This document shows, piece by piece, positions 20,227 to 61,696 of a DNA stretch of 64,000 nucleotides. The stretch covers positions 1 to 64,000 of IMG/VR virus record IMGVR_UViG_3300034072_000926, one strand, 5' to 3'. The position numbers and the translations under genes are program-made. Positions within the stretch are counted from its first letter, which is position 1, and each line of letters opens with the position of its first letter. The notes under the pieces are model-generated. The model was not told the DNA's origin, searched no databases, and was given only the letters and a program-made list of their open reading frames with translations.

Positions 20227-20652
20227 TTATTTCACAGGGTTAGGCTTGTATTTGGGATCCTCCCAACGCTTTACACATTTAGGAGTTGGATTGACACCCC
20301 TGTGATAGGTCTGCCATTTAACAGGCTTTCCAGAGCGGGTCCTATTATGGTAGACGTTCTCGTCATATTGAAGAGACAACTTGATCATGAGATATTGTTG
20401 CTTCGTCAGCCCGTAAGCCGCAAACGCATTGAGGAAACGATAAGGCAGACCTTCCTTATCGAAACAGAAAGGCATATTCCTAAATTCGTTGAGAACCCTT
20501 GGGTATTTGCCACGAATGTAATTCACCAGTTCCTTGTTGCGAGCTCGGACAGCCTTACAATAATCAGTCCAACCAGAGTCTGGTTGGTAGGTAAAGAGGT
20601 CATACAGTCCATCCTTGCGATGGATGACATTGAGCTTGATCTGCTCGCTCAT
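20227..20652 (-). CDS. hypothetical protein (YLMIKL motif)
   Basis: 141 aa ORF, coupled to upstream gene. Confidence 0.7.
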   Translation of the reverse strand: MSEQIKLNVIHRKDGLYDLFTYQPDSGWTDYCKAVRARNKELVNYIRGKYPRVLNEFRNMPFCFDKEGLPYRFLNAFAAYGLTKQQYLMIKLSLQYDENVYHNRTRSGKPVKWQTYHRGVNPTPKCVKRWEDPKYKPNPVK

Positions 20653-21128
20653 GCCTCTTTCACCTTTTTAGGGGCAACTTTGTCGGCCATTCGCTTCTTC
20701 AAGGTTTCGCTTGGTTCAAGAGGTTCAGTCTGGTCTAATGCCCAAACATCGCCTGCATATGATGCTTTACCACCAAGCTCTGCTTTCTTGGTTGTGAAAA
20801 CCCAGGCAAGCTTGATTCGCATCATGTCATTGCGAGAGACATTATAGGCAACGAAGCACTTATCATCGTTGATTGTCTTGTAACGAACGCTCCAACTACG
20901 ATAACGATAGTCTCGCACCCGCTTCTTCGACATATAACGGAACTCAGTAGGAACTTCCTTGAGATTCATCCGAATCCAATTGCAGAACTTCCTAGTGTTA
21001 TTGGTCTTCGCTCGTTCTGTCAGGTTATGAGCAGAGTTCCATGAACCAACTTGGTCATGATGCACCATGATAGTTGAGGTGCCATCTTCGTTCTCTAAGA
21101 TGTAGAGCGGGAAGTCTAGGGTATTCAC
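20649..21128 (-). CDS. hypothetical protein (DMMRIKLAW motif)
   Basis: 159 aa ORF, overlapping stop/start. Confidence 0.7.
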   Translation of the reverse strand: MNTLDFPLYILENEDGTSTIMVHHDQVGSWNSAHNLTERAKTNNTRKFCNWIRMNLKEVPTEFRYMSKKRVRDYRYRSWSVRYKTINDDKCFVAYNVSRNDMMRIKLAWVFTTKKAELGGKASYAGDVWALDQTEPLEPSETLKKRMADKVAPKKVKEA

Positions 21129-25407: not shown

Positions 25408-25862
25408 TAGTCTTCGTCAGACTCTTCCTCGTCATCGAGACGATTGAGTTCATCATCGAGATCGCCGTTATCGATACACTGGTCGATGGCCTGGTCGATG
25501 ATACCGAGATCATGCGAATACCAGCCCTGGCGGTTGAAGAAATCGACAATCTGATCTAGATCAGTGATCTCTTCAACGGCTACATTGGACCAGAAGTCCA
25601 GCTGGACTTCACTATGCTTGCCGGCGAAGTCCGAATAATGAGCCGAAAGACCCGAAAGGGCATTGTATTTCTTGGCCCAATCATCCTTATGGAAGATCTG
25701 ACAGTCTTCGATTTCGGCCACTCGGCCATATCGGAAACCAATCTTGACCAACACATGGTCTTTGAAGCGGAAGAGATTCCGCTGGGCATCGACTTCGTCC
25801 CAGGTCATTGCAAGGACGCCGGCGACTACGATTCCTTTTTCTGTGATTCCAATATCAGCCAT
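25407..25862 (-). CDS. hypothetical protein
   Basis: GGAGG RBS before MADIG. Confidence 0.7.
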   Translation of the reverse strand: MADIGITEKGIVVAGVLAMTWDEVDAQRNLFRFKDHVLVKIGFRYGRVAEIEDCQIFHKDDWAKKYNALSGLSAHYSDFAGKHSEVQLDFWSNVAVEEITDLDQIVDFFNRQGWYSHDLGIIDQAIDQCIDNGDLDDELNRLDDEEESDED

Positions 25863-27555
25863 CGACTGCCTCCTTGAGAGTTTCCAGATCCAGGACGGTG
25901 ACCTTGAGGGTGCCCTGGTATGCAAGTTTGAACATGAGCGCTGCGTTCTTATTTGCGAAGCTCACTGCCATGGAACGATAGTCGACCGCTTTCTTGAAGG
26001 TGCCGCGCTTCAGTCCGAGGCTCGCGATAGCATCCTCAATAAGCTTCTTCTCACCATCATTGATCGCGGTAGTGTCGCCGTGGTAGCCAACATCATCGAG
26101 CTTGTCTTCGTTGGTTTCCGTGAAGACGACCATGCCCTTCTGGCTATCGAGAAGCTTTGCTTTCTCAAGTGCCTTGTAGACAGTGCGGACACTCGAACCA
26201 AATTGAACGGTCAGTTCACGCAATTCCCAGCTACGCTTGAACCATTCCTGGAAATCTTCGACCGGGCCGATTTCCTTGCGACCCAGCTTATCGAACTTGA
26301 CCATTTCCCAGTCGTCAGTGACCTCAAAGGTCTTTCCACCGCCGCCCCATTCAGGCAGGGATTCGTCGGCGCCTGGCAGATTTTCATAATAGCCAGTGAT
26401 CATGAGAACGCTGGTCTTGGCTTTACCCAAGTTGTCCCACTTCTTGCCCTTCATGAAAGTGTCGGCCATATCCTGCGCGTCAACGCTGAAATCGCGATCA
26501 CTGTTTGACGAGAAGCGATAGTTACCCTCGTCGTAGTTGGGGCCGACATAATACTTGCCAGTCGGCTTATGGCGAAGGACCCAGACATCAACTGTCGGAA
26601 TACTTTCCGCCTCGATGAAGTCCTTGATCATGCTGTATTCCAGGCCAATGGGCCTGGTGTCGATGCCTTCACGCAGAACTGGAGCCACGTTTCCGTAACG
26701 CTCGCCCTGCCAGCCATTCGGTTGGAAATAGCTCAGGAACTTACCAGTGACCTCGAGAATCGTTCCGGCTGGAAGGTTGACATAGAGCTTCGGGATATAT
26801 TCGCCGAGGTCCTTATTAGTCTGAGCACGAAATGCTTCGCGAGCCTTATACCATTCCGAGTGGGCACCTTGCGGCACATTCGCCCCATGACCGGGATGCG
26901 GGTTAGCCTTGTCATAAGCATTGATTGCTGCATGATATGCAGGATTGGCCGCGCCATACATGATGTCGAGGTCTTGTGTGACCTTCCAGCGACTTCCAGT
27001 GACCATCTGCTGACGAATGTTCACCTTCGGCTGCTTCTTGCGCGCTTCCGGCTTTTCGACCAGCTGAACGTTCTTCGCGAACGTTGCTTTATCGTTCTTC
27101 GACCAGAAGACAATCACATCATCAGGAGTGTATCGGGATTCACCCAGCTTGGTATATTCCTGGCGAACTTGTTCATGTGCGACGGAATCAGCTTTCCAAG
27201 CCTTTTCCCAGTCAGCTTCACGCTCGGGAATGAGTTCCATGCGATCATACGCCTCGTAGGTATATGAACCGCCACGCCCGTTCGGAACGGTCCGAGCAGG
27301 GTAATGGACTTTGTGACGGAAGGACTGATCGATCGCCTCGAACTGCGACCTCAAGTCATTAAGACGACGTTCACGTTCGTCCTTCTCAGCTTGGGTCAGC
27401 TTGTCATCCGCGTTCGGAAGTGCGGTGCTGCTGATTTCGACAACAACTTCCTTACCAGTTTTGTCGTCTTTACTATTCCAGCGCCTGATCAGTTCAGTTC
27501 CCTTTGGCACCTTCATGTAAAGCCCCTTCTGAAACGGGCTTGCCTTGAGTTCCAT
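25855..27555 (-). CDS. large hypothetical protein ending in AALMFKLAY motif
   Basis: GGAGG RBS before MELKAS; own TTGCAA promoter. Confidence 0.8.
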   Translation of the reverse strand: MELKASPFQKGLYMKVPKGTELIRRWNSKDDKTGKEVVVEISSTALPNADDKLTQAEKDERERRLNDLRSQFEAIDQSFRHKVHYPARTVPNGRGGSYTYEAYDRMELIPEREADWEKAWKADSVAHEQVRQEYTKLGESRYTPDDVIVFWSKNDKATFAKNVQLVEKPEARKKQPKVNIRQQMVTGSRWKVTQDLDIMYGAANPAYHAAINAYDKANPHPGHGANVPQGAHSEWYKAREAFRAQTNKDLGEYIPKLYVNLPAGTILEVTGKFLSYFQPNGWQGERYGNVAPVLREGIDTRPIGLEYSMIKDFIEAESIPTVDVWVLRHKPTGKYYVGPNYDEGNYRFSSNSDRDFSVDAQDMADTFMKGKKWDNLGKAKTSVLMITGYYENLPGADESLPEWGGGGKTFEVTDDWEMVKFDKLGRKEIGPVEDFQEWFKRSWELRELTVQFGSSVRTVYKALEKAKLLDSQKGMVVFTETNEDKLDDVGYHGDTTAINDGEKKLIEDAIASLGLKRGTFKKAVDYRSMAVSFANKNAALMFKLAYQGTLKVTVLDLETLKEAVDG

Positions 27556-27611
27556 AAGTCCTCCTAAGATTACCCGAGGACTATAAAGAGTTCCTACCAT
27601 GTTGCAAGCAG

Positions 27612-27788
27612 AAAAAGAGCCCCGATCTGTTTCCAGACCGGGGCCAAGAAGCGGGAGCAAGCTCAACCGCTACAGGAGATACTCAGGCTATTGTCACCCG
27701 CTATTTTCGGCAGGTTCGGGTCTTTCCACCCATCCCCTAGAAGCTTTTCGGCCTCGTTCCCTATCGTTGCGCGTTATCGTCGCCACAC
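27612..27788 (-). ncRNA. candidate stand-alone sRNA
   Basis: Promoter TTGACT at 27815-27820; ends in terminator GCCCCGGTCTG-GAAA-CAGATCGGGGC-TCTTTTT; no RBS-led ORF. Confidence 0.5.
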
Positions 27789-47884: not shown

Positions 47885-48307
47885 TTAGGCGAACAAAGCC
47901 TTGAGCTTCTGCCAGAACGACAGCTTAGGCTGTGGGGTAAGATCCGTCAGACCATTATAGCGATCCAGGAACTTCCACGAGATGTTCTTAGCACCGAAAG
48001 CCTTGAGAGCCTCAAATGCCATGTTGGGGTCGAGATCGCTACAGGTGTAGATATCGAACTCGATGAAGGGCTGATCACATTCGTCCCACGTATGAAGAAT
48101 CATATGAGACGTTGTGATATAGACCCCGGCCGTCATGCCACGGTTACCAACTTGTTCGCAATATTCCGCAGAAGCCTCTTTCAAGACTTCCATGTCCATT
48201 GCGTGGACGATGTCGGTGAGCCACTGTTCGACGAAACGTTCGTCCTTCTTCAGCGGCGGATTGTCCACATGAGCGTGGACGATAAGGTGCTTGTGAAGCT
48301 TAGCCAT
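47885..48307 (-). CDS. S-adenosylmethionine decarboxylase-like proenzyme
   Basis: HKHLI...GMTA..YITTSH..LHTWDE...FDIYTC. Confidence 0.8.
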   Translation of the reverse strand: MAKLHKHLIVHAHVDNPPLKKDERFVEQWLTDIVHAMDMEVLKEASAEYCEQVGNRGMTAGVYITTSHMILHTWDECDQPFIEFDIYTCSDLDPNMAFEALKAFGAKNISWKFLDRYNGLTDLTPQPKLSFWQKLKALFA

Positions 48308-48806: not shown

Positions 48807-48946
48807 AGCTGAGCTGCTCTTATGTGTATTTTCTCCTGCTCTGTCAATATCGTTTTACCAATCCGATAAATTAACCTGTATCCAATGTGAAAATTGACAC
48901 TTTGGGTTCCTAAAACATATTGTCAAACAAAGAACAAGGGTTAACC

Positions 48947-50818
48947 ATGTCCAACAACATTAAGAAACTAACAGATTACCAACACGCTCGCTTGAGGACA
49001 GAGATGTATCTGGGTTCGAGGTCACTCCATACTCAGAACGTCCTGCAATTCGTAGATGGCAAGCCACAGCCTGTTGAGACATCTTGGGTGCCTGCATTAT
49101 ATACAGCATTCCGTGAAGTTCTCGACAACGCACTCGATGAAGTAGTGGGTCACGGCCACGGCAGTCGCATTGATGTCACATATGATCCTAAGACTCGCGA
49201 GGTCAGTGTTCAGGACGATGGTCGTGGTATCCCTATCGCTTATGATGAATCGCATAAGTGTCACCTCGCAACGCTGGTTATGACTGAAGCTCGTGCTGGT
49301 CGTAACTTTGAAGAGCGCGGCGAAGTCGCGGGAACTAACGGTATCGGTGCATCGGTTGTGAACTTCTGCTCCGAATTTTTCCGTCTTGACATCCATAAGG
49401 ATGGCGAAAGGTTCCAGCAGGAATTCACACAGGGTAATGCAGTCTTTGGTGACGAACTACAGGTCGGAAAGCCGAAGATTGTAAAGAAGCAGAATAAGAA
49501 CGGAACAAAGATCACGTTCAAGCTGAGCGATGAAGTCTTCCCTGACTTGACTCTCCCTGAGGAGTTCATTCGTTCGCGCGTAACTGAGGTTGCAATCTGC
49601 AATCCATTGATCAAGATCTTCTACAATGGAGAACAGGTCAAGGTCAAGCCGCGACCTGAACAGAGCCTCTTCCCTGGCTTGAAGCCAATGGCCCTAGAAG
49701 TGAAGGAAGATACCTTCCGTAGCCGCTTCTGGATTGTGCCCAATTGGGTCAAGGACGGCGAGCATGTTCATACGATTGTTAACAATATTCCTGCCTTTAA
49801 CGGCGGTGTTCACATTGATATTTTCCGTCGTCTCTTTTATGGCAACCTGATCACGGCTCTAGAGAAGGAAAGCAAGCGTCGCAAGCTGACTCCTAACCGC
49901 TCAGATGTTACTGAAGGTGTTCTGATCTACAACATCACGAACATGAGGGCTCCGAACTTCGATAGTCAGTCCAAGACACGACTGATCAATGAAGAAGTTG
50001 GTAAGATCATCAAAAGCCAGCTAGAAGATCCTGAACTCTACAAGGAGTTCATTAAGAAGAACCGAGAGTGGATTGAGGAAATCTACAAGCGTTGTGCAGA
50101 ACGCACAATGAAGAAAGACCTCGGTGATCTCGCGAAGGCTGCAAAGAAGAATCTCCGCACCAAGGTTCCTGGACTGATGGATGCTATTGCGACTGATCGC
50201 ACATCTTGCATTCTCTTCCTCGCAGAAGGTGACTCGGCAATTTCGGGTATGAGCTCTGTTCGTAATCCTGAAATCCATGGTGGTCTTGCGCTTTCGGGTA
50301 AGGTGCTCAACGTCAATGGCGAAATGCCTAAGAAGGTCGTCGAGAACAAGGCTCTCGGTGAGATCATGAGCAGCATTGGTTTGGTCGTTGGACAGAAGGC
50401 CCATCGCGGTGCTCTGCGCTATGGCCAGGTATATGTCGCACATGACATGGATCCCGACGGTCTAAACATCGGTGCGCTTCTGATCAACTTCTTCCACACT
50501 TACTGGCCTGAGTTGTTTGCTGATCCAAAGAACCCGTTTGTTCATATCTTCCGCACCCCGTTCATCATTGCTGAAAAGGGTAAAGCTCGCAAATACTGGT
50601 ATGCTCATAACTACCAGGACTTCAAGCCAGAAGATTACAGCGGTTGGTCGATCACCCGTGCAAAGGGTCTCGGAACTCTCACCCGTGCCGATTGGGAATA
50701 CTCTCTGAAGAACCCAGAAGTCTACCCAATTGTGGATGATGGCAAGATGGGTGAGACTTTGGACCTGATCTTCAACGGCAAGCGTTCGGACGATCGCAAG
50801 ACCTGGATTGGCCTATAA
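48947..50818 (+). CDS. type II DNA topoisomerase ATPase/TOPRIM subunit (T4 gp39+60-like)
   Basis: EVLDNALDE, DDGRGIP, GTNGIG, AEGDSA, D.DPDG. Confidence 0.95.
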   Translation: MSNNIKKLTDYQHARLRTEMYLGSRSLHTQNVLQFVDGKPQPVETSWVPALYTAFREVLDNALDEVVGHGHGSRIDVTYDPKTREVSVQDDGRGIPIAYDESHKCHLATLVMTEARAGRNFEERGEVAGTNGIGASVVNFCSEFFRLDIHKDGERFQQEFTQGNAVFGDELQVGKPKIVKKQNKNGTKITFKLSDEVFPDLTLPEEFIRSRVTEVAICNPLIKIFYNGEQVKVKPRPEQSLFPGLKPMALEVKEDTFRSRFWIVPNWVKDGEHVHTIVNNIPAFNGGVHIDIFRRLFYGNLITALEKESKRRKLTPNRSDVTEGVLIYNITNMRAPNFDSQSKTRLINEEVGKIIKSQLEDPELYKEFIKKNREWIEEIYKRCAERTMKKDLGDLAKAAKKNLRTKVPGLMDAIATDRTSCILFLAEGDSAISGMSSVRNPEIHGGLALSGKVLNVNGEMPKKVVENKALGEIMSSIGLVVGQKAHRGALRYGQVYVAHDMDPDGLNIGALLINFFHTYWPELFADPKNPFVHIFRTPFIIAEKGKARKYWYAHNYQDFKPEDYSGWSITRAKGLGTLTRADWEYSLKNPEVYPIVDDGKMGETLDLIFNGKRSDDRKTWIGL

Positions 50819-51150
50819 TGACAGATAACTCTCAGATTAGTCCAGATACTTTCTGGAAAGACGAAGAGGGCATCGAGGAACATTACTGTAATGTCTATGT
50901 GGCAATTGACAAGGTCAAGAGCTCGACCGTTTGGTATGAAGACCTCGACGATAACGTCATCGAATGGCTGAATACAAACGCCGGCAATCGGAGAGCCCAC
51001 GGTCTTGAATGGTATCAGAATCTCGAGTTAGACCGATATGATTGGTCGGTTCGAGGCACTGTCAGGTATAAGGGACAGAGCTGTATCCAGATCTTGATCA
51101 AGGATAAGCGAGCTGCAATGATGTTCAAGCTGTCATGGGGCGGTTTGTGA
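50818..51150 (+). CDS. FKLxWGG-family small protein
   Basis: Ends AAMMFKLSWGGL. Confidence 0.8.
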   Translation: MTDNSQISPDTFWKDEEGIEEHYCNVYVAIDKVKSSTVWYEDLDDNVIEWLNTNAGNRRAHGLEWYQNLELDRYDWSVRGTVRYKGQSCIQILIKDKRAAMMFKLSWGGL

Positions 51151-51398
51151 ACGTTCAGTGTCGTAACTTCATAAAGAGTAACGATGGTAACAAATTTCTC
51201 GGGTGTGTCACAACTGATGCACCCGAGACGTTCAAGCTTTGGCTCGCAATGGCTTGTCCTACAAGCCAGCAAGTTCTTATATTTGAACGCAATGATGGAG
51301 CCATACGAGAAGAGGGCGGCTATCGTTGGAGGCTCAATATCGTCCTGAATGATCGGAAAGAAGCCCTTATGTTCAAGCTTCGTTGGTATGGCGCATGA
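51147..51398 (+). CDS. FKLxWGG-family small protein
   Basis: Ends EALMFKLRWYGA; GTG overlaps upstream TGA. Confidence 0.75.
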   Translation: MNVQCRNFIKSNDGNKFLGCVTTDAPETFKLWLAMACPTSQQVLIFERNDGAIREEGGYRWRLNIVLNDRKEALMFKLRWYGA

Positions 51399-51667
51399 GC
51401 TTCTCTAACTGGTATGCTGTCTGGTATGAGCCAGAACCCGATGACATTATGGCCTACATCTCTATGGAGAAAATTGCCGTCATAGGCGGTGCCGAAAACA
51501 ATGGAACCTATGAGGCTTTCCAGATCAATCAGGGTAATGCCATCCTGTCTAAGTGGTGTAGAGTAAATTGCAAATCGCCGGGCAAACCTGTAAATGTGCG
51601 TGGTGAACCTGCGTGGGCCTTTAAGGACGCCCAAGATGCTTTGCTGTTCAAACTAACTTGGGGTTAA
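51395..51667 (+). CDS. FKLxWGG-family small protein
   Basis: Ends DALLFKLTWG; ATGA overlap. Confidence 0.8.
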   Translation: MSFSNWYAVWYEPEPDDIMAYISMEKIAVIGGAENNGTYEAFQINQGNAILSKWCRVNCKSPGKPVNVRGEPAWAFKDAQDALLFKLTWG

Positions 51668-51668
51668 G

Positions 51669-52073
51669 ATGTACCACGGCAACAAACAATTCGACCTAGA
51701 GACAACAGCTAAATTCTGGCTACTTCAGATTCGTGGCATTCGTATCAGCTATTATGGCAAGGAAGGCTATTCTGCGATCGATTGGTGTACGGCAAATGTA
51801 AAGGGTCATTGGGGTTGGAACCATGAACCTGAACTGATCAAAAATAGTGATATCGTTAAGAACATTGACTATCATTTCACTGGCATCTGGCCCAAGGCCG
51901 AAGAAGATGATGAAACCAGAATGATGAACGCTATGGCTCGTCAATTACAGCAAGACATAGATGATGAAATTTTAGAGAAACTCGGGGTAAAGAGGATTCG
52001 TCCCTCAGGTTATTTCTGGTTCGATAACAATGACGACGCAATGCTGTTCAAGCTGACCTGGGGTGGTGAATGA
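51669..52073 (+). CDS. FKLxWGG-family small protein
   Basis: Ends DAMLFKLTWGGE. Confidence 0.8.
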   Translation: MYHGNKQFDLETTAKFWLLQIRGIRISYYGKEGYSAIDWCTANVKGHWGWNHEPELIKNSDIVKNIDYHFTGIWPKAEEDDETRMMNAMARQLQQDIDDEILEKLGVKRIRPSGYFWFDNNDDAMLFKLTWGGE

Positions 52074-52360
52074 AGGATTACGATTTCGTCACAGTTTATC
52101 TCCCCTATGTTGGTGCAGTTGCCCGTGGAGAGTATAGCCACTTGATCTCTGAGGAAGTGGTTGCATGGCTCAATGAACACGTAGGCAACGGCACCGTTTC
52201 ATATCGTCACTGGTTGCTCAACTACGACAATGACACCTACCAGTGGACCTATAAGGGAACTGATTACTCCTCTGAATCTCATCATACAAAGATAGTCAGA
52301 GCATTCTGCTTCAAAGACATAGACAAAGCCAGCCTATTCAAATTGGTATGGGGTGGATAA
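52070..52360 (+). CDS. FKLxWGG-family small protein
   Basis: Ends KASLFKLVWGG. Confidence 0.8.
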   Translation: MKDYDFVTVYLPYVGAVARGEYSHLISEEVVAWLNEHVGNGTVSYRHWLLNYDNDTYQWTYKGTDYSSESHHTKIVRAFCFKDIDKASLFKLVWGG

Positions 52361-52368
52361 GTAGATTT

Positions 52369-52806
52369 ATGCAATCTACTCGTGCCAAATATCTAACAGA
52401 ATATCGTGCTTTACGAAATGCAATTCACCGTTGTCATAACAGCAAGAATAAGCAATATAAAGACTATGGCGGACGAGGTATAACCGTCTTTGATGAATGG
52501 CATACTGATTTTGACGCATTTATAAAACATATAGGACCTAAGCCTAGTCCTGATTTGACCTTAGAACGTATAGATAATGATAAGGGATATGAGCCTAATA
52601 ATGTTACATGGGCGACTAGGTCTGAGCAGCAATACAACAGAAGATCACATAGTTCAGCGGCCCGAATTACAATCAACGGGCAATCTTATACCTTGAATGA
52701 ATGGTCAAAGATAAGTGGAATAAATGCCACTACTTTACGATCAAGATTAAATAAAGGTGTAAGCCAATCTGAATTACTAAATCCAGTTGGTAAAACTGGA
52801 GTTTAG
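52369..52806 (+). CDS. HNH homing endonuclease
   Basis: RC.N...K.YKDYGGRGITV..EW..DF..F....TLERIDNDKGYEP.NV.WAT..EQ..NR; AT-rich. Confidence 0.9.
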   Translation: MQSTRAKYLTEYRALRNAIHRCHNSKNKQYKDYGGRGITVFDEWHTDFDAFIKHIGPKPSPDLTLERIDNDKGYEPNNVTWATRSEQQYNRRSHSSAARITINGQSYTLNEWSKISGINATTLRSRLNKGVSQSELLNPVGKTGV

Positions 52807-52807
52807 A

Positions 52808-53104
52808 ATGAAAGTAGCATATAACTTCCTACCTGATTACCAATTCCCTCATTGGATAGATCACAGCACAACACCTGCTAGTGACAACCTCACTCACTTC
52901 ATGAATGTCAACGAATGGTGCGGCAAGCAATTCGGGGACCTTGGTGTGAATTGGGGTTATGAGCGCAAGACTGATACCTCATCTGCGCCGAACGGGATGA
53001 ACCCTGTCAGGGTGCGTCTGCATTATACCACAATTCATTACAGCTGGCGTTTCAAGAACAAGGAAGATGCTGCTTTGTTCAAACTCACGTGGGGTGGCGC
53101 GTGA
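52808..53104 (+). CDS. FKLxWGG-family small protein
   Basis: Ends DAALFKLTWGGA. Confidence 0.8.
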   Translation: MKVAYNFLPDYQFPHWIDHSTTPASDNLTHFMNVNEWCGKQFGDLGVNWGYERKTDTSSAPNGMNPVRVRLHYTTIHYSWRFKNKEDAALFKLTWGGA

Positions 53105-53403
53105 AGCTTACAGAATACGAAACAGTCTCGATCTATGTTCCAGAGAGTCGACGACTAGGCTCGGGTAGCGGACAGAGCTTTAAGCTCAACCCTGACCTTA
53201 TTGAATGGGCTGATATGATGTACGGCTACAAGGCTCCCGACATGACTTACTTCGTTGCCAACCTTGACAATGATGCTTATGGTTGGGCGCATGGTGGTAT
53301 GGCAGCTAGTCCTAATCCTCTCGATAATCGCCTCTATCGCAAGTTCATGTTCAAGAAGGAATCTGATGCCTTGATGTTCAAATTGACATGGGGTGGCAAT
53401 TGA
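53101..53403 (+). CDS. FKLxWGG-family small protein
   Basis: Ends DALMFKLTWGGN. Confidence 0.8.
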   Translation: MKLTEYETVSIYVPESRRLGSGSGQSFKLNPDLIEWADMMYGYKAPDMTYFVANLDNDAYGWAHGGMAASPNPLDNRLYRKFMFKKESDALMFKLTWGGN

Positions 53404-53684
53404 GTGGATATCAGATCAGGTTCAATATCGAGGACATCTACGAGATTCAAGAACATTTCGGCTTAACGTGGGAATGTCTGACCGTCGGAATGCGTCGAGA
53501 GCATGAAAAGGAATGGATATTAAATCTCACCAGAGTTATTGACGCGTTAACTCAATGGTGTAAGGATAACGGTATAAGGCAATACTGGTTTGGCTACACT
53601 CAGATCGAATTGTGCGTAACCTTTCAAGAGAAGAAGGACGCGATGCTATTCAAGTTGAGGTGGCATAATGGTAAGAGAAGTTGA
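53400..53684 (+). CDS. FKLxWGG-family small protein
   Basis: DAMLFKLRW near C-terminus. Confidence 0.75.
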   Translation: MSGYQIRFNIEDIYEIQEHFGLTWECLTVGMRREHEKEWILNLTRVIDALTQWCKDNGIRQYWFGYTQIELCVTFQEKKDAMLFKLRWHNGKRS

Positions 53685-53871
53685 GACAGGATATGTGGGA
53701 TTCAACCCACCAGTCTATCACAAGTCTGATCGGTATTATCGAATTTGGGAGATCATTGACGAAATGAATCTCCGTCGTACGGTTGCCTTCATGTATCAAG
53801 GCAATATGGAATTGGTAGGGCTAGGCTTCCCTACGAAACAAGAAGCAATGATTTTCAGGTTGAAACTATAA
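53668..53871 (+). CDS. FKLxWGG-family small protein (divergent)
   Basis: Ends EAMIFRLKL. Confidence 0.7.
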   Translation: MVREVETGYVGFNPPVYHKSDRYYRIWEIIDEMNLRRTVAFMYQGNMELVGLGFPTKQEAMIFRLKL

Positions 53872-54122
53872 TGGGAACAGTTCACAGAAACGGCATACCG
53901 CCCAAGCGTCTTCCTTTCAAGAAGGTCCAAACCTATTCCGATATGGAGTTCAATGAAGAACTCATCACGAAATGGGCAAGGGAACAACTGGAGAACCACA
54001 TGCAATATGACATCGTGGTCTTCAATGGCACGAAAGGGAAGCTCAACCGTTCTATTGAGTTCACAGCCTGGTTTCAGACTAAGATTGATGCTGAACGCTT
54101 CCAGAAGAAATGGATGAAGTGA
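53871..54122 (+). CDS. FKLxWGG-family small protein (divergent)
   Basis: Ends DAERFQKKWMK. Confidence 0.7.
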   Translation: MGTVHRNGIPPKRLPFKKVQTYSDMEFNEELITKWAREQLENHMQYDIVVFNGTKGKLNRSIEFTAWFQTKIDAERFQKKWMK

Positions 54123-54415
54123 ACAATCAGATCTACATTGTTGATCGCGTGGATCAGGTCAAGTGGTATATCGACGAAGAGACTGCGATGACCTTCTGTC
54201 TACAGATGGATAAGAATCATCGAGTCATCCGAAACTGGCTAATGGAAATGACCTCCAACACCGTGGTCATAAGTGGTCAGGGCGTCATGCCTCGTATGGG
54301 ATCGAGTGATCATCCCAACAATGTCTACCAATCCATTTCCCGTGACCAATTCAAACTCTATTTCGCAGACGCAGACGATGCAATGCTGTTCAAACTAACT
54401 TGGGGTGGCGAATGA
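54110..54415 (+). CDS. FKLxWGG-family small protein
   Basis: Ends DAMLFKLTWGGE. Confidence 0.8.
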   Translation: MDEVNNQIYIVDRVDQVKWYIDEETAMTFCLQMDKNHRVIRNWLMEMTSNTVVISGQGVMPRMGSSDHPNNVYQSISRDQFKLYFADADDAMLFKLTWGGE

Positions 54416-54594
54416 CCACGTGCAAACTCTACAAGGCTTATCTCCTTAGCGATCGTGTCGAGGGTCCTAATATTCTGACTTTCTATGCCTACCACATGAG
54501 TGAGAAAGCAGCCAAGCAGGCTGCTATTCGTTGGGCTCAAGGTCAACATCCTGGCGCAAGCATCACCCTCGATAAAGTTGACTTGCTCTCATAA
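54412..54594 (+). CDS. hypothetical protein
   Basis: ATGA overlap; lacks the family motif. Confidence 0.6.
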   Translation: MTTCKLYKAYLLSDRVEGPNILTFYAYHMSEKAAKQAAIRWAQGQHPGASITLDKVDLLS

Positions 54595-54611
54595 CTCACT
54601 ATTATGGGCTT

Positions 54612-54968
54612 ATGAAAATAAGCTTCTGTCCTTGGCGTTCCCTGTCGCACCCTTACAGGGTCCAGTGGGGCTCTGTCTATGATTTAGTAACGCAGCAAAG
54701 CTCTGGTCCTAGAAGTTCTGAGGACTTCGCTCTGCGCGCCGCATGGGTTATTCGTTCTGAGGTTCTCAAATACATCGAAGAGTTACCTGATAGGAAATTC
54801 TTGTTCTTCTTTAAGATCAAGCCTATGGCGGCTGTGGCTTGTCAAGAGGCACGGTATATCGCAGGTCGTGCTGGACGAGTAACAGCCTTCCCTATACCTA
54901 AGCCTTTAATGTTCGCTCGCAAGAGTGACATTATGATGTTTAAGCTTCGTTTCGGCGGTCGTCTGTAA
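54612..54968 (+). CDS. FKLxWGG-family small protein
   Basis: Ends DIMMFKLRFGGRL. Confidence 0.75.
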   Translation: MKISFCPWRSLSHPYRVQWGSVYDLVTQQSSGPRSSEDFALRAAWVIRSEVLKYIEELPDRKFLFFFKIKPMAAVACQEARYIAGRAGRVTAFPIPKPLMFARKSDIMMFKLRFGGRL

Positions 54969-55333
54969 TGGAATTGTCTGCTAGGGGATTACCGTCGCTT
55001 CGCATTACTCAGGGATACCATGTCGTGATTCGTGCCCCTGATTATCCAGGCTTACTTCCGCATCAAGAACGTTTCAAACATGGGTTCACAAATGAACTCA
55101 AAGATTGGCTCTTAGAGCATGTGGGTCAACCTGCGACAAATCTCACATGGGAAAATGGCGAGGGCGATTGGATTCATACTGGCTGCCGTCAAGGCAAAGT
55201 AGAATGGGTTAATGCCCATACCCCTTCGGTCATCAACAGCATGGACTTCTATTTTAGAGACCGGCGTCGAGCGAGACGTTTCAAGATAGTCTGGGAACGC
55301 TATTTTGAGATAGCACTGGGACCTTTCACCTAA
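54968..55333 (+). CDS. FKLxWGG-family small protein (divergent)
   Basis: FYF....RARRFKIVW. Confidence 0.7.
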   Translation: MELSARGLPSLRITQGYHVVIRAPDYPGLLPHQERFKHGFTNELKDWLLEHVGQPATNLTWENGEGDWIHTGCRQGKVEWVNAHTPSVINSMDFYFRDRRRARRFKIVWERYFEIALGPFT

Positions 55334-55391: not shown

Positions 55392-56747
55392 ATGACCCAA
55401 AATAGCTCAAATTATATCCTAGACACATCTCGCGAATATTCTATCTACGTATGTGAATCCCGTGCAATTCCTAAGGTCACAGACGGCCTAAAGGATGCTC
55501 AGCGCAAAGCGCTCTGGCTCGTTAAGAGCAAAGCCGAAAAGATCAAGACCGTATCGTTGGCTGGTGAAATGATCTCCAGCGGACTATATCTGCACGGCGA
55601 CGCATCTGCCGCCGGTGCTATCTCGATGTTGGCTGCACCCTATGTCAATAACGTCCCGCTCCTTGATGGTATTGGTTCGTTTGGCACTCGTGTTGCGCCC
55701 GTTGATGGCATTGGTGCTCCTCGCTATACCTATGTGAAGCGTGGTAAGGCTGCGCTAGAACTCATGTTCCCAGACATGGACATCGTCCCCGTAAAGGAGA
55801 ACTACGATGGATCTACCATCGAGCCTCAGCATTTTCTTCCACTTATTCCCACGGTTCTGCTCAACGGAGTCAGTGGCATCGCTGTTGGTTGGAGTACTGA
55901 AATTCTACCCCGTAGCTTCAAGAGCCTCATTGATGCTACCATAGCAATTCTTGATGGGAAGACGATCAAGCGTATCCCTCCCAGCTACGAACTCTACAAT
56001 GTTGGTGTGAAGCACCTTGAGGAGAACTCTTGGGAGTTCACTGGTAAGTTGGAGATCGTTGATACCTCGACGATCAAGATCACTGAGCTACCTCCTGAAC
56101 TGACCCTTGAGAAGTTCAAGGAACGACTCAATACATATGAGGACGAGAACCGAATCTCGACCTATACCGACCGTTCCACTGACACCATCGACATCACGAT
56201 CAAGATGGCACGTGGCACTGTTAAGGGCTGGTCGGAATCTCGCGCAATCGAATACTTCAAGCTGAAGCAGAAGAAGAGCGAGCGTATTGTTGTCATCGAC
56301 TGGAACAACACATCTATCCGTCAGTATGAGAACGCTGAACAGCTAGTCAAGGACTTTGTTGCTTGGCGTTTGGAATGGTATAAGACCCGCTACGAACACA
56401 AGCTGACCAAGGATGATTACGAGCTTGGTTTCTGGAAAGGTGTTAAGGCTTGCTTCGATGACAAGCTTCCTGCTCGTTTGGGTTCGATCAAGAGTCGTGC
56501 TGATCTAGATGCTGATGTTCGTGTGGTTGCAGAAGCCAAGAAGGTCATCTTGGATGACAAGCGTATTGATCGCATTGTCAACTTGCCAGCACATCGTTGG
56601 ACCAAAGATGCTTACGCAGATGTGTTGGCTAAGATCAAGGAACTCGAAGCTAACATCAAGGATTACAAGGCCATTTTGAAGGACCCTGAGAGGCGCAAGT
56701 CGATCTATAGGGAAGAGCTAGAAACTCTCAAGAAGGTTAAGTTCTAA
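55392..56747 (+). CDS. type II DNA topoisomerase breakage-reunion subunit (T4 gp52-like)
   Basis: RAIP...DGLK..QRK, YLHGDAS, GAPRY active-site Tyr, LLNG.SGIAVGW.T. Confidence 0.95.
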   Translation: MTQNSSNYILDTSREYSIYVCESRAIPKVTDGLKDAQRKALWLVKSKAEKIKTVSLAGEMISSGLYLHGDASAAGAISMLAAPYVNNVPLLDGIGSFGTRVAPVDGIGAPRYTYVKRGKAALELMFPDMDIVPVKENYDGSTIEPQHFLPLIPTVLLNGVSGIAVGWSTEILPRSFKSLIDATIAILDGKTIKRIPPSYELYNVGVKHLEENSWEFTGKLEIVDTSTIKITELPPELTLEKFKERLNTYEDENRISTYTDRSTDTIDITIKMARGTVKGWSESRAIEYFKLKQKKSERIVVIDWNNTSIRQYENAEQLVKDFVAWRLEWYKTRYEHKLTKDDYELGFWKGVKACFDDKLPARLGSIKSRADLDADVRVVAEAKKVILDDKRIDRIVNLPAHRWTKDAYADVLAKIKELEANIKDYKAILKDPERRKSIYREELETLKKVKF

Positions 56748-58038: not shown

Positions 58039-58275
58039 TTACTGGCTTTGGAGTTTGATATACATTGCATACCGCTTCTCGATCTTTTCGATCGCTTCGA
58101 GATACGGTGCTGCGGCTTCTTCTGCGGCTTTCTTTTTCGCCGCGTTCATTTCCAGTTTGAGTTCCTGGATCTGATTCCACATGTCCGTGATAGCCGTGCC
58201 TTCCGAGAGGATTTCCTGCTCGGTCGTGCCCGACTTGGACATCAATTGCTTGCGAACGGTGGAGAGAATGCTCAT
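58039..58275 (-). CDS. hypothetical protein
   Basis: 78 aa, ATGA-type coupling. Confidence 0.7.
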   Translation of the reverse strand: MSILSTVRKQLMSKSGTTEQEILSEGTAITDMWNQIQELKLEMNAAKKKAAEEAAAPYLEAIEKIEKRYAMYIKLQSQ

Positions 58276-58721
58276 GCGATCTGCACCGTTATACCAGCCT
58301 GACGGAGGTAATTAACGGCCTCGAGGATCTTTCGATTCCACGCTTCGGCGGCAAGGTCCATAGGCTTATCGGGCATCGAGACGCTGACCCACTGGTTCAC
58401 GCAACTCTCAATGGCATGCTTGGCTTCAACGAGCCCCATGCCCGTCAGACCGCGCAGTTCCTTGATCGCGTTGATCTTTTGCCACTGAGTAGTCCCATCG
58501 ACATATAGTCGCAAAGTCTTCGCATTGGGGAACTTGTTGGACACAATGCCCATAATGAGGCGTGCCTTCCAGTCCTTGCCGAGGATCGGCGCGAGGGCTT
58601 CCAGGACTTCGATCGAGGTGTCTCGGGTATAGAACTGCTTGATAACGCGCAGAAAAGAAGCCGAAACTTCGTCGAGCGCGAAGAACTGATCGTCCTCAGT
58701 TTCAGGGTCAATGAGTGCCAC
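58272..58721 (-). CDS. protein with C-terminal bL12-CTD-like domain
   Basis: KINAIKELRGLTGMGLVEAKHAIE; AGGAG RBS before GTG. Confidence 0.75.
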   Translation of the reverse strand: MALIDPETEDDQFFALDEVSASFLRVIKQFYTRDTSIEVLEALAPILGKDWKARLIMGIVSNKFPNAKTLRLYVDGTTQWQKINAIKELRGLTGMGLVEAKHAIESCVNQWVSVSMPDKPMDLAAEAWNRKILEAVNYLRQAGITVQIA

Positions 58722-58822
58722 GGTATCTCCTTTGATTCGCCGCAGCTCTACACTCCTTGCACCGCTTGTCAACCTTTCATATAAGTATTGTGCTGAAAAG
58801 AATATCTTGTTATTGTGGTTTA

Positions 58823-59485: not shown

Positions 59486-60028
59486 TTGAAATTAACAGGA
59501 GTATTGGTGCTCCTCTCGTTCCTATTGCTGACGCCAAAACCAGCCGAAGCCGGAACACTACCTAAATACCAAACGCTGCATACTGCGGTCCGTTCACTGA
59601 ACACGCTCATCCCTGAGATCAGTGCTGCTAATCGGACCGAACAAGAACAGATGTTGTGCCTCGCACTAAACATCTATCATGAGATTCGTGGGGGGACACC
59701 GCGTGATCAGTGGGCAGTTGCTTTTGTGACACTAAACCGAACCAAGCGTAGCGCCTTCAAAGCGCGCAATGTTTGTGATGTCGTTTGGGCACCAGGGCAA
59801 TTTAGTTGGACTAGGTGGGCAATGAGGGCACAGTTGCCACGTGAGAATGGATCATGGAAGGAAAGTCAAAGAAAAGCCTTCCTACTTCTCAGTGGTGAGA
59901 AAATGAATGACCCTACGAACGGCTCGACGCATTTCTATCAGGCAAGGTTGAATCCTGGTTGGGCCCGTCGCTTAGTTAATAAGGTTCGTATCGGAAGCCA
60001 TATGTTTGCGAGTTTACCAGGCAGGTAA
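59486..60028 (+). CDS. cell wall hydrolase, SleB (Hydrolase_2) family
   Basis: CLALNIYHEIRG....Q.AVA.V.LNR...CDVV...GQFSW...TNG.THF...IG.H.F; signal peptide. Confidence 0.92.
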   Translation: MKLTGVLVLLSFLLLTPKPAEAGTLPKYQTLHTAVRSLNTLIPEISAANRTEQEQMLCLALNIYHEIRGGTPRDQWAVAFVTLNRTKRSAFKARNVCDVVWAPGQFSWTRWAMRAQLPRENGSWKESQRKAFLLLSGEKMNDPTNGSTHFYQARLNPGWARRLVNKVRIGSHMFASLPGR

Positions 60029-60117: not shown

Positions 60118-60675
60118 TTACCCTAGGTAAATTGCACTATTTGCACCATGCTCGAAGCATTCAACGCTCACGAGACGCACATCAGGGTTAACCGCATAAC
60201 GACCTAGTTCGCCCTTCTTCATCTTCTCAAGAAGTTCGACGGACTTGTCATAGACTAGCTTGGCGGTCAATTCACAACCCACCCCAGGAACGATACGGAG
60301 ATCGCACAGACGTCCGACAGAATAAGGAGTCGGTGTGAAACCGCTGCCGTCTTCTTCGCTAGAAGCTTTGCCATTCCAATTTGCATCTAGAGCAAACTTT
60401 GCAAAGGTTTCAAATACTTCACGCGCAGGATCATCCTCAGCGACCAAGATCGTGTGGTCAAACATATGATCTAGATAAGCCTTAATGGGCTTCATTCCGC
60501 CGAAGTCGAAACACCAGTTCTTTTCATCAAGCGTTTCAGACTCGAAAACAAACTTGAAGCCTAGCGAGTAGCCATGAAGCGTTGAGCAATGGCTGTGATT
60601 TGCCTTCCACTGACGGAAGCAGCAGGAGAGTCCACGGTCAGTGCCGTAGGTTTTGGTCGATTGATACTTTGCCAT
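60118..60675 (-). CDS. queD: 6-carboxytetrahydropterin synthase QueD-like
   Basis: CFRQW.A.SHC..LHGYS...WCFDFG..K.IK..L...FDH...E. Confidence 0.88.
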   Translation of the reverse strand: MAKYQSTKTYGTDRGLSCCFRQWKANHSHCSTLHGYSLGFKFVFESETLDEKNWCFDFGGMKPIKAYLDHMFDHTILVAEDDPAREVFETFAKFALDANWNGKASSEEDGSGFTPTPYSVGRLCDLRIVPGVGCELTAKLVYDKSVELLEKMKKGELGRYAVNPDVRLVSVECFEHGANSAIYLG

Positions 60676-61324: not shown

Positions 61325-61696
61325 ATGCGTGGGCTCACTCCTGACGAACGTGAGATGTGGTCGAAAGTAACCAAGGACGTCACACCCCTTGGTTCTACCC
61401 CTATGAGCCCCGTAGAGCAGTCAATCGTGCTTCCAGCAACCACACCGCGCGCAAAACCTTTCCGACCCGTATTGGACTTGCATGGGCTTACTTTGCACGA
61501 TGCTTATAATCGTTCAGTTTCCCATATCGCTAATGCGGCCGGAAAGTATCGCTATGTGGTCATTATTACTGGCTTGAGCGGGCAGATCAGAGAAGAGTTT
61601 CCTAAGTGGTTCTCTAATCACGCACTCGTGAGATCGATTAACTCACTACGAGGCGGAGGAGCCTGGGAAGTATGGCTGAAGAAAAGAGATACGTAG
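61325..61696 (+). CDS. Smr/MutS2-domain protein
   Basis: E..MW..V.+DV.PL; LDLHGLT..DA; VIITG.SG; GGGAW.V.LK. Confidence 0.88.
   Translation: MRGLTPDEREMWSKVTKDVTPLGSTPMSPVEQSIVLPATTPRAKPFRPVLDLHGLTLHDAYNRSVSHIANAAGKYRYVVIITGLSGQIREEFPKWFSNHALVRSINSLRGGGAWEVWLKKRDT

What the first reader, a model, noticed from the sequence alone, without database searches (positions are those of the whole stretch)
50818..55333. Tandem array of 13 hypervariable small proteins sharing a C-terminal A(M/L)(L/M)FKL(T/R)WGG motif between the topoisomerase II subunits
Seen: 67-134 aa ORFs with unrelated-looking N-termini but a common end (F.F....DA..FKL.WGG), chained by ATGA/GTGA/TAATG overlaps. Three more copies lie at 62281-63082, with degenerate internal versions at 13978, 20227, 20649, 25855 and 58823. 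Motif codons vary synonymously (AAG/AAA, CTG/TTG/CTA/CTC), so selection is on the protein. TGGGGTGG also acts as the SD for the next gene. Inference: an expanded small-fold family with diversified surfaces (anti-defence or host-protein binders), in which the conserved 3' DNA end could also serve as a recombination joint for cassette shuffling.
Basis: partly seen in the sequence, partly recalled or inferred. Interest (0 to 1): 0.65.

Follow-up and report, generated by a model that had tools for sequence, protein, structure and literature searches.

The report
Expanded small-protein family in jumbo phage
The gene array between the two topoisomerase genes of this 465-kb jumbo phage is one cluster of an undescribed virus-specific family of small proteins. 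The genome holds about 76-89 copies, all sharing one small fold, and their function is unknown.

Summary
The array is real. There are 13 motif-bearing small ORFs, one doubtful 60-64 aa ORF and one HNH homing endonuclease between the topoisomerase II large and medium subunit genes.

The whole genome (465,259 bp, a relative of Sinorhizobium phage Phosso and Agrobacterium phage Atu_ph07) holds 76-89 family members, about 6% of its DNA. Phosso has 62 matches and another 417-kb viral record has 97. A profile search finds 3110 unnamed clusters in metagenomes. Pfam, PHROGs, PDB sequences and the papers searched have no counterpart.

Homology covers a whole domain of about 70 aa, not only the C-terminus. 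Two AlphaFold models give the same strand-helix-strand-strand-helix sandwich, with an invariant Trp in helix 1 and an invariant Lys in helix 2.

The genes are not hypervariable:
- Paralogs are old (42% identity or less).
- Orthologs keep their order in relatives.
- pN/pS against a 99%-identical strain is 0.08.

Content does change in whole-gene steps:
- The first cassette is absent from three near-identical strains and came in with a divergent recombination tract.
- The HNH gene is present or absent at one exact site.

The motif DNA is too dissimilar to be a good recombination joint. The function is inferred, not shown: most likely diversified binders of host or defence targets.

The parts
48920..50818 (+). 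Topoisomerase II large subunit (T4 gp39-like). Its last ~970 nt (49847-50812) form a divergent recombination tract. The protein ends in ...TWIGL.
   Evidence: tblastn gives 71% identity to the Phosso 'DNA topoisomerase large subunit'. Relatives' orthologs carry HATPase_c, DNA_gyraseB and Toprim. 79 of the gene's 89 SNPs against L032 lie in 49847-50812.
50818..51150 (+). Family member W01 (110 aa), a polymorphic cassette.
   Evidence: HMM E 4.9e-14. It is absent from L032 and from DNA runs X3 and X4, which show a joint 50812>51145.
51135..51398 (+). Family member W02 (87 aa from the first ATG). The likelier start is the GTG at 51147, which overlaps the W01 stop.
   Evidence: HMM E 4.3e-6. Its ortholog M01 is the first gene after the topoisomerase gene in L013. 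Junction.
51383..51667 (+). Family member W03 (94 aa). The likelier start is the ATG at 51395 (ATGA overlap).
   Evidence: HMM E 1.6e-9. 61% identical to M02. The gene call in L032 maps to 51395. It holds a cluster of 11 SNPs at 51430-51498.
51669..52073 (+). Family member W04 (134 aa), with a long insert between the helices.
   Evidence: HMM E 8.6e-10. Orthologs are J01 (44% identity) and M03 (31%).
52070..52360 (+).
   Evidence: HMM E 8.6e-14. AlphaFold model: pLDDT 69.6, pTM 0.61, strand-helix-strand-strand-helix. 69% identical to J02; no ortholog in L013.
52348..52806 (+). Free-standing HNH homing endonuclease (likely start ATG 52369). It is not a family member and is a mobile insertion.
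   Evidence: phrog_3377 E 7e-46. Runs X4 and X6 have 52361-52807 replaced by 10 nt, and a loose end in X7 agrees. It is absent from the L013 and L014 arrays.
52787..53104 (+). Family member W07. The true start is most likely the ATG at 52808 (98 aa).
   Evidence: HMM E 3.6e-14. The HNH-less joint resumes at 52808, and the L032 gene call maps there. 66% identical to M06.
53089..53403 (+). Family member W08. The likely start is the GTG at 53101 (100 aa). Subject of the second model.
   Evidence: HMM E 1.3e-14. AlphaFold model: pLDDT 77.4, pTM 0.65, same topology as W05. 53% identical to J03.
53388..53684 (+). Family member W09 (98 aa), ending ...FKLRWHNGKRS.
   Evidence: HMM E 5e-13. Orthologs are J04 (59% identity) and M07 (57%).
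53668..53871 (+). Member W10 (67 aa) with a degenerate end, ...EAMIFRLKL.
   Evidence: It falls out of the iterated HMM (E 2.2). It has conserved orthologs J05 (75% identity) and M08 (54%) with the same end.
53871..54122 (+). Family member W11 (83 aa) with a divergent end, ...DAERFQKKWMK.
   Evidence: HMM E 1.4e-7. 83% identical to M09 and 64% to J06. Homologs P0003-P0006 were found in metagenomes.
54110..54415 (+). Family member W12 (101 aa).
   Evidence: HMM E 1.2e-11. 68% identical to J07 and 51% to M10.
54400..54594 (+). Small ORF W13 (60 aa from the ATG at 54412). Family membership is doubtful: the motif is only faintly recognisable.
   Evidence: Not found by the HMM and no Pfam hit. Its ortholog M12 is 38% identical and sits at the same position.
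54612..54968 (+). Family member W14 (118 aa). It follows one of only two real intergenic gaps, and that gap holds a promoter-like site at 54578-54605.
   Evidence: HMM E 2.9e-6. 36% identical to M14. Promoter-like match 10 of 12.
54968..55333 (+). Family member W15 (121 aa). The motif is internal (...ARRFKIVWERY...), followed by a short tail.
   Evidence: HMM E 2.7e-10. 35% identical to M15.
55392..56747 (+). Topoisomerase II medium subunit (T4 gp52-like).
   Evidence: Orthologs in the relatives carry PF00521 DNA_topoisoIV. Annotated 'topoisomerase IV subunit A' in Phosso and Atu_ph07.
62281..63136 (-). Second cluster of three family members (62281-62574, 62571-62798, 62795-63136) next to the tRNA nucleotidyltransferase gene.
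   Evidence: HMM E 2.4e-9, 1.2e-11 and 2.7e-10. The syntenic Phosso cluster has 5-6 members at L001 17972-19855.
25855..27666 (-). 603-aa ORF whose C-terminal ~45 residues match the family's last strand and helix.
   Evidence: HMM E 9e-7, aligned to residues 558-598. Similar long ORFs of 537-640 aa match in three IMG/VR records. No Pfam or PHROG hit.
20649..21128 (-). 159-aa ORF with a weak internal match to the family profile.
   Evidence: HMM E 0.0028, residues 50-114. No Pfam hit.

Best explanation
The array is one cluster of a very large, old, virus-specific multigene family.

Shown here:
- Each gene encodes a small soluble single-domain protein (a core of about 70 aa, 60-135 aa in total).
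- The domain is predicted to fold as a strand-helix-strand-strand-helix two-layer sandwich.
- The conserved residues are mostly hydrophobic and are taken here to build the core: W in strand 1, E..W(L)..N in helix 1, G.W in strand 2, F.F in strand 3, and DAMLFKLTW in the C-terminal helix. One Lys in that helix is invariant.
- The N-terminal stretch and the loops between the helices differ in length, sequence and charge.
- The genes sit head to tail on the strand of the topoisomerase II genes, with 1-4 nt stop/start overlaps.
- Each paralog is anciently diverged, kept in colinear order in relatives and under purifying selection.
- Array content changes in whole-gene steps: homologous exchange with related phages through the conserved flanks, and insertion of a homing endonuclease.

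Inferred:
- The genes are transcribed with the DNA-replication genes and translated by coupling, with the W-G-G codons supplying a Shine-Dalgarno-like word.
- Each copy has its own job.
- The most likely job is a repertoire of binders, each recognising a different host or defence component during takeover of the cell, built on one stable scaffold.
For: Family and scale:
- 89 ORFs at E<=1e-3 with an iterated HMM, and 76 with a profile built mainly from metagenomic homologs. This is 6.2% of the genome, in 23 clusters, one with 31 members.
- 62 matches in Phosso and 6 in Atu_ph07. 97, 27, 23, 21 and 1 in five IMG/VR records. 3110 clusters in 1.84 billion representatives.

Fold and conservation:
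- Two paralogs 27-28% identical give the same topology.
- W36 and K94 are invariant, and A90, F93, L95 and W97 nearly so, over 144 sequences. The segment between the helices is 23-85 residues long.
- pI ranges from 4.7 to 10.3.

Selection and age:
- Synonymous codon spread in the motif.
- pN/pS of 0.08 against a 99% identical strain, with all ORFs intact.
- Best paralog identity has a median of 32% and a maximum of 42%.
- Orthologs are colinear at 35-83% identity in L013 and L014.

Operon context: overlaps. Promoter-like sites lie before the topoisomerase gene and in the only two gaps.

Turnover.

Virus-specific:
- Contexts are large phage contigs.
- Atlas look-alikes are 93-100% viral.
- One exact motif hit in 185,579 bacterial and archaeal species genomes.
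Against: - No experiment, fusion partner or known homolog links the family to any target. Pfam, PHROGs, PDB sequences and fold searches give nothing specific.
- The models are of middling confidence (pLDDT 70-77), and both rest on overlapping alignments.
- Transcription is not shown. The two RNA libraries hold contigs of the array, but DNA carry-over cannot be excluded.
- An invariant Lys and a conserved terminal W-G-G could mark a shared ligand or partner site. That would point to a common activity rather than many different targets.
- The invariance is partly a product of choosing the best-scoring 150 hits.
Confidence: 0.5

Rival explanations
1. The family has one common biochemical activity. 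It could bind a small molecule or a nucleic acid, for example as sponges for defence signalling nucleotides or as RNA or ssDNA binders. Many copies would then give dosage or fine specificity, and the invariant Lys and terminal W-G-G would form the shared site.
For: - The best structural neighbours are ACT, KH and RRM-type two-layer sandwiches, at Z 4.4-5.9.
- The Lys is invariant and the C-terminal helix nearly invariant.
- Some members carry two or three tandem modules.
Against: - Z below 6 is within the background for such small sandwiches, as the notes say, and Foldseek finds nothing.
- The predicted topology lacks the fourth strand of ACT and RRM domains.
- pI runs from 4.7 to 10.3, so there is no common basic surface.
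- Dosage does not explain paralogs at 42% identity or less, each kept by purifying selection.
Confidence: 0.2
2. The conserved 3' end is primarily a DNA or RNA signal. It would serve as a recombination joint for cassette shuffling and as a ribosome-binding and coupling element. On this view the protein motif is a by-product.
For: - Every cassette ends in a similar 48-nt stretch.
- The W-G-G codons lie 5-10 nt before the next start.
- The one cassette indel begins right after the topoisomerase gene's ...TGGATTGGC and ends just after W01's ...TGGGGCGGT. The topoisomerase protein itself ends in TWIGL, which resembles the family's end.
Against: - The motif codons are spread over synonymous alternatives.
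- Shared exact words are typically 5-8 nt, and repeat identity is 60-71%.
- The motif is kept in Phosso members that end in ...TWL, without the GG, and in single-copy prophage members.
- The dissected indel lies inside a ~1.3-kb divergent tract, so the crossovers were in the flanks.
- There are no recent intragenomic duplicates.
Confidence: 0.08
3. The proteins are minor virion, decoration or assembly components, of which this very large 'hairy' phage group needs many.
For: - Atu_ph07-type phages have elaborate virions with hair-like fibres (PMC7824862).
- Many virion proteins of Atu_ph07 are 'hypothetical' (PMC11242549).
Against: - The arrays lie among replication and nucleotide-metabolism genes, on their strand.
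- Atu_ph07 itself has only about 6 weak matches.
- A 35.7-kb provirus carries one copy at the end of a short same-strand gene run downstream of a divergently oriented integrase-like gene.
- No member matches a structural PHROG.
Confidence: 0.05

Closest known systems
Lineage-specific expansion of a zinc ribbon in Bacillus phage G (~35 copies), described as unprecedented in Iyer et al. 2021 (PMC7824862)
   Same: One small domain multiplied many times within a single jumbo phage genome. Function is unknown and was proposed from context only.
   Different: - The fold is different and has no metal-binding cysteines.
- The copy number here is two to three times higher (76-89; 97 in a relative).
- The family is spread over thousands of metagenomic clusters.
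- No sequence relation was tested or is expected.
Plastic regions of small early genes in T4-like phages, and the host-takeover module of small proteins in Bacillus phage SPO1 (own knowledge, not tested here)
   Same: Runs of short, tightly packed, co-oriented genes lie between conserved replication genes. They vary between relatives and are interspersed with homing endonucleases.
   Different: In those phages the small genes are mostly unrelated to each other. Here nearly all belong to one homologous family.
ACT, RRM and KH-type two-layer alpha/beta sandwiches (e.g. 5uyy/5v0s ACT domain of TyrA, 6exx RRM, 1j4w KH; also the C-terminal part of 1v8c)
   Same: A small sheet packed against two helices. 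VIA-align gives Z 4.4-5.9 over 61-79 residues for both models.
   Different: - The scores are within background.
- The predicted order strand-helix-strand-strand-helix has three strands, not four.
- There is no sequence similarity (4-16% identity).
- Foldseek finds no match at E<=0.001.
Unnamed clusters of viral hypothetical proteins in BFVD and the ESM Atlas, including Atu_ph07 protein A0A2L0UZT1
   Same: These are probably the same family. Foldseek gives probability 0.9-1.0 and E down to 3.5e-3 to small 'uncultured Caudovirales phage' proteins. Atlas clusters of 53-662 members are 93-100% viral, with TM 0.54-0.60.
   Different: None of them carries a name, a Pfam family or a function.

Membership tests
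Any curated protein family (Pfam-A, PHROGs v4) | A significant match of members to a family profile | tested here: not met
   Ten array proteins and then all 62 members of A2 were scanned. No family is matched by more than one member, and none reaches a curated cut-off. Longer proteins carrying the module also have no hits.
Any protein with a solved structure | Sequence-profile or fold match clearly above background | tested here: not met
   The A3 profile against PDB sequences gives a best E of 0.27. Foldseek against PDB finds nothing at E<=0.001 for either model. The best VIA-align wide scores are Z 5.9 and 5.7.
ACT domain | Strand-helix-strand-strand-helix-strand fold with a four-stranded sheet | tested here: inconclusive
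   Both models have three strands and end in a helix. Z is 4.9-5.5 to the TyrA ACT domain. Loops are modelled at pLDDT 53-70.
ACT domain | Ligand binding at a dimer interface | not testable with these tools
   No ligand or oligomer test was run.
Ubiquitin-like / MoaD-ThiS proteins (considered because of the C-terminal G-G and the top hit 1v8c) | Beta-grasp fold with a flexible tail ending in G-G | tested here: not met
   The predicted order of elements is strand-helix-strand-strand-helix, and the G-G follows the last helix directly. The match to 1v8c covers only residues 85-165. Many members lack G-G (the Phosso members end in ...TWL) or carry 1-28 residues after the Trp.
Free-standing HNH homing endonuclease (for 52348-52806 only) | HNH nuclease family match | tested here: met
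   phrog_3377 E 7e-46, phrog_374 E 3e-40.
Free-standing HNH homing endonuclease (for 52348-52806 only) | Presence or absence at one exact site in otherwise near-identical genomes | tested here: met
   The joint 52360>52808 with 10 replacing letters is seen in runs X4 and X6, and a loose end in X7 agrees. The gene is present in the window, in L032 and in X3.
Lineage-specific expanded multigene family | Many paralogs in one genome related at significant E-values and arranged largely in tandem | tested here: met
   76-89 members in 23 clusters.
Lineage-specific expanded multigene family | Copy number differs strongly between related lineages | tested here: met
   Phosso has 62 matches and Atu_ph07 has 6. 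Escherichia phage PBECO4 and Erwinia phage Hallingskeid have 0.
Anti-defence proteins (anti-CRISPR, nucleotide sponges and the like) | Demonstrated inhibition of a defence system, or homology to a protein with that activity | not tested
   No anti-defence library was at hand. No homology to anything named was found. The functional test needs the bench.

The most novel reading that the evidence does not exclude
This is a previously unrecognised, virus-specific protein superfamily: thousands of clusters with no Pfam, PHROG or PDB counterpart. In Atu_ph07/Phosso-type jumbo phages it reaches about 60-100 copies per genome, two to three times the ~35-copy expansion in phage G that a 2021 review called unprecedented. 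It would work as a combinatorial library of binders on one stable mini-scaffold, each member neutralising or redirecting a different host or defence protein.
Probability: 0.3. Interest if true: 0.8.

Novelty: new member of a known kind. Interest (0 to 1): 0.55.

Why it matters
- About 6% of a 465-kb phage genome, and a similar share in its relatives, is spent on one unannotated small domain. Explaining that domain would explain a sizeable part of the 'unique ORFs' reported for these jumbo rhizobiophages (304 of 643 protein-coding ORFs in AP-J-162; PMC11242549).
- The family gives a natural series of dozens of diverged versions of one mini-fold in a single genome. A cultured relative (Phosso on Sinorhizobium meliloti) makes it testable.
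- If the members are target-specific binders, they are a ready source of inhibitors of host and defence proteins.
- The family deserves a profile in Pfam and PHROGs in any case.

Tried and rejected
- Nucleotide search of the array against 50,697 phage records found no match. tblastn of one member at E 0.01 found none either. The proteins are too short and too divergent for BLAST, and profiles were needed.
It was replaced by degenerate DNA patterns.
- Fold searches (Foldseek PDB twice, BFVD, VIA-align wide twice, Atlas) gave only generic alpha/beta sandwiches and unnamed viral clusters.
- The ESM Atlas feature search had a best score of 0.88 to unnamed viral clusters, and the nearest named cluster is probably chance.
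- A fusion-partner approach failed. Longer proteins that carry the module have no recognisable second domain.
- Context of a single-copy provirus member (L026) gave no functional hint.
- The papers searched do not describe the family: the Atu_ph07 and AP-J-162 genome papers, a jumbo phage review and a term search.
- A ubiquitin-like reading of the C-terminal G-G was rejected on predicted topology.
- A degron reading for the neighbouring phage ClpX was considered and set aside. The motif is a helix inside the predicted fold, and the tails after the Trp vary.
- The upstream-most starts that give 'MGW...' N-termini (ATG inside ...ACATGGGG...) were considered as real dual coding. Gene calls in relatives and the HNH-less joint favour the 4-nt overlap starts.
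- Complex prediction was not used, because no specific pair is claimed to bind.
- No alternative genetic code was used.

Full report
**What the window is.** The window is the first 64 kb of a single 465,259-bp virus record, 49.1% G+C, rated 100% complete by CheckV. Its topoisomerase II large subunit is 71% identical to that of Sinorhizobium phage Phosso (469 kb) and 61% identical to that of Agrobacterium phage Atu_ph07 (490 kb). It is about 48% identical to those of the enterobacterial Asteriusvirus-type jumbo phages. Neighbouring genes fit a large T4-related phage:
- an S-adenosylmethionine decarboxylase (47885-48307; the ClpX and IF-3 genes lie just upstream of it in the relatives)
- a protein with an L7/L12-like domain (58272-58772)
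- a SleB-type hydrolase (59486-60028)
- a 6-pyruvoyl-tetrahydropterin synthase-like protein (60118-60675)
- an Smr protein (61325-61696)
- a tRNA nucleotidyltransferase (63082 onward)

**The observation.** Fifteen co-oriented ORFs fill the space between the topoisomerase large subunit (48920-50818) and medium subunit (55392-56747).
Twelve of these score E 3e-6 to 1e-14 against a family HMM. The thirteenth (53668-53871) has a degenerate end and is held in the family by its orthologs.
- One ORF (52348-52806) is an HNH endonuclease (phrog_3377, E 7e-46).
- One (54400-54594) is a 60-64 aa ORF that the HMM does not recognise.
- The degenerate DNA word for F-K-L-x-W-G occurs seven times in the window and never in 100 shuffles.
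- Motif codons are spread over synonymous alternatives, so the conservation is at the protein level: four Ala codons, both Lys codons and six Leu codons over 70 members.
- Three more members lie at 62281-63136 on the minus strand.
- Of the five 'internal versions', one is supported (the 603-aa ORF ending at 25855), one is weak (20649-21128) and three are not supported.

**It is a whole domain, not a C-terminal tag.** Alignments of 62 genome members (A2) and of 144 members including metagenomic homologs (A3) show conservation along the whole protein:
- an invariant Trp in an upstream helix (E..W(L)..N)
- a conserved W...V.V..P strand near the N-terminus
- a G.W strand
- the F.F strand
- the helix D-A-M-L-F-K-L-T-W, with an invariant Lys

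Two AlphaFold models were made. W05 has pLDDT 69.6 and pTM 0.61. W08, modelled on the deeper alignment, has pLDDT 77.4 and pTM 0.65. Both give the same order: strand, helix, strand, strand, helix. The variable parts are the N-terminal stretch (17-72 residues before the Trp) and the segment between the two helices (23-85 residues).

One caution applies: both models draw on overlapping alignments.

**Scale.**
- An HMM iterated on all ORFs of 35 aa or more finds 89 members in this genome.
- A profile built mostly from foreign homologs finds 76.
- They occupy 6.2% of the DNA in 23 clusters. The largest cluster (312-325 kb) has 31 members.
- Phosso has 62 matches and Atu_ph07 only 6 weak ones.
- Five IMG/VR records give 97 (417 kb), 27 (a 39.5-kb fragment), 23, 21 and 1 (a 35.7-kb provirus).
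- PBECO4 and Hallingskeid have none, and their topoisomerase genes are adjacent.
- After the word search returned only 6 near-orthologs and the family scans nothing, the exhaustive profile search found 3110 clusters at E<=0.001. Most are 60-110 aa, and some have two or three tandem modules.
- Of ten clusters looked up, nine carry no name and one is labelled only 'hypothetical protein'.
- Contexts are large phage contigs.
- The exact motif pattern occurs in a single one of 185,579 bacterial and archaeal species genomes.
- A 2021 review called a ~35-copy zinc-ribbon expansion in phage G unprecedented (PMC7824862). The two genome papers on this phage group do not mention the family.

**Known relatives: none found.** Pfam and PHROGs give nothing for any of 62 members. 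PDB sequences give a best E of 0.27, and Foldseek against PDB finds nothing. VIA-align gives Z up to 5.9 to ACT, KH and RRM-type sandwiches and to the C-terminal part of 1v8c, which is within background for such small folds. BFVD and the ESM Atlas return only unnamed viral clusters, including an Atu_ph07 protein.

**Evolution.**
- The paralogs are old. The best identity to any other copy has a median of 32% and a maximum of 42%, so there are no recent duplications.
- In a 481-kb metagenomic relative (L013, 16 small ORFs between the topoisomerase genes) and a JGI relative (15 ORFs; a 2.2-kb fragment of it is L014), orthologs are colinear at 35-83% identity. Some genes have been gained or lost.
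- Phosso has 4 ORFs at this site and Atu_ph07 none.
- Against a 99%-identical genome (L032, NCBI GCA_902726455.1) all members are intact. pN/pS is 0.08 for the family and 0.04 for the neighbouring genes. 'Hypervariable' is therefore wrong at this scale.
- SNPs are clustered in patches of about 70-230 nt, which suggests short exchange tracts.

**Turnover, dissected.**
- W01 (50813-51144) is missing from L032 and from two DNA runs of different studies, with the same joint in each.
- The joint runs from the topoisomerase gene's ...TGGATTGGC to the TTGTGA that ends W01 in the window. The topoisomerase protein itself ends in TWIGL, much like a family member.
- The window's last ~970 nt of the topoisomerase gene carry 79 SNPs against L032 (about 8%). 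Three more SNPs follow just after W01. The surrounding DNA is 99% or more identical.
- W01 therefore most likely came in, or was kept, on a ~1.3-kb tract exchanged with a divergent relative through homologous flanks. It was not moved by recombination at the motif.
- The motif DNA is a poor substrate. Shared exact words are typically 5-8 nt, at most 23, and the 48-nt repeat is 60-71% identical.
- The HNH gene is replaced by 10 nt in three runs, which is the signature of a free-standing homing endonuclease. The same joint shows that W07 starts at the ATG at 52808.

**Gene starts and coupling.** The ORF listing takes the first possible start, which often lies inside ...A-TGG-GG... and produces 'MGW' N-termini. 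The G-rich W-G-G codons then lie 5-10 nt upstream of the next start. This is compatible with a Shine-Dalgarno role, but that role is untested. It cannot be the reason for the motif either, because Phosso members end in ...TWL. Promoter-like sites with 10 of 12 matches lie before the topoisomerase gene and in the only two intergenic gaps, at 54578 and 55338. The total number of such sites is not above chance.

**Expression.** Two wastewater metatranscriptome libraries hold contigs covering parts of the array, but DNA carry-over cannot be excluded.

**Explanation.**
- Shown: this is a very large, old, virus-specific family with one small predicted fold and diverse loops and charge. It is packed into the replication-gene operons, kept by purifying selection, and exchanged in whole-gene steps.
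- Inferred: each copy has its own target, most likely host or defence components during takeover.
- Rival readings: a shared ligand or nucleic-acid site around the invariant Lys; the motif as a DNA or RNA signal; virion components. Each is weighed in its own section.
- I put about 0.9 on the descriptive part and about 0.35-0.4 on the binder-repertoire function. The figure of 0.5 is for the statement as a whole.

Noticed in passing
window 52348-52806: An HNH homing endonuclease gene sits inside the array. It is present or absent at one exact site among near-identical strains, and 10 nt replace it in three runs.
   Followed up: yes
window 49847-51164: This tract is about 8% divergent from the otherwise 99%-identical genome L032. 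It covers the 3' third of the topoisomerase large-subunit gene and cassette W01, which indicates recent exchange with a more distant relative.
   Followed up: yes
L032 19406-19896 (window site 61474/61475): The near-identical relative has a 491-bp insertion in the Smr gene region. The insertion carries a 111-aa ORF with weak PD-(D/E)XK endonuclease similarity (E 0.01, below the cut-off). It leaves a truncated copy of the Smr N-terminus upstream and provides a diverged N-terminal segment for the intact Smr gene downstream. It is probably another homing element, and the window lacks it.
   Followed up: partly
window 25855-27666 (-): A 603-aa ORF of unknown function ends in the family's last strand and helix. 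Comparable 537-640 aa ORFs match the profile in three IMG/VR relatives. The only hint of the module fused to something larger found in the window; no second domain was recognised.
   Followed up: partly
window 48920-50818, C-terminus: The topoisomerase II large subunit ends in ...KTWIGL, which resembles the family's ...(L)xWGG(L) end, and the next gene starts in the same overlapped way. This could be coincidence or a shared coupling constraint.
   Followed up: no
window 58272-58772 (-): A phage ORF carries a ribosomal protein L7/L12 C-terminal-domain match (E 4.7e-7, above the Pfam cut-off). The relatives encode IF-3 and ClpX a few kb upstream of the topoisomerase genes, so this phage group carries translation-related genes.
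   Followed up: no
window 50818-55333 in public runs X3, X4, X8, X12 and X17: DNA runs filed under single coded organisms (A, B, C) hold 7-82% of the array's words. They may be isolates carrying or contaminated with this phage and could point to its host. The names are coded and were not resolved.
   Followed up: no
L026 7280-7585 (IMG/VR provirus of 35.7 kb); L036 (Novosphingobium guangzhouense contig): Single copies of the family, with the full motif, occur in a small provirus and in one bacterial genome. The domain is therefore not confined to jumbo phages.
   Followed up: partly
genome 312472-325222 (outside the window): This is the largest cluster of the family.
   Followed up: partly
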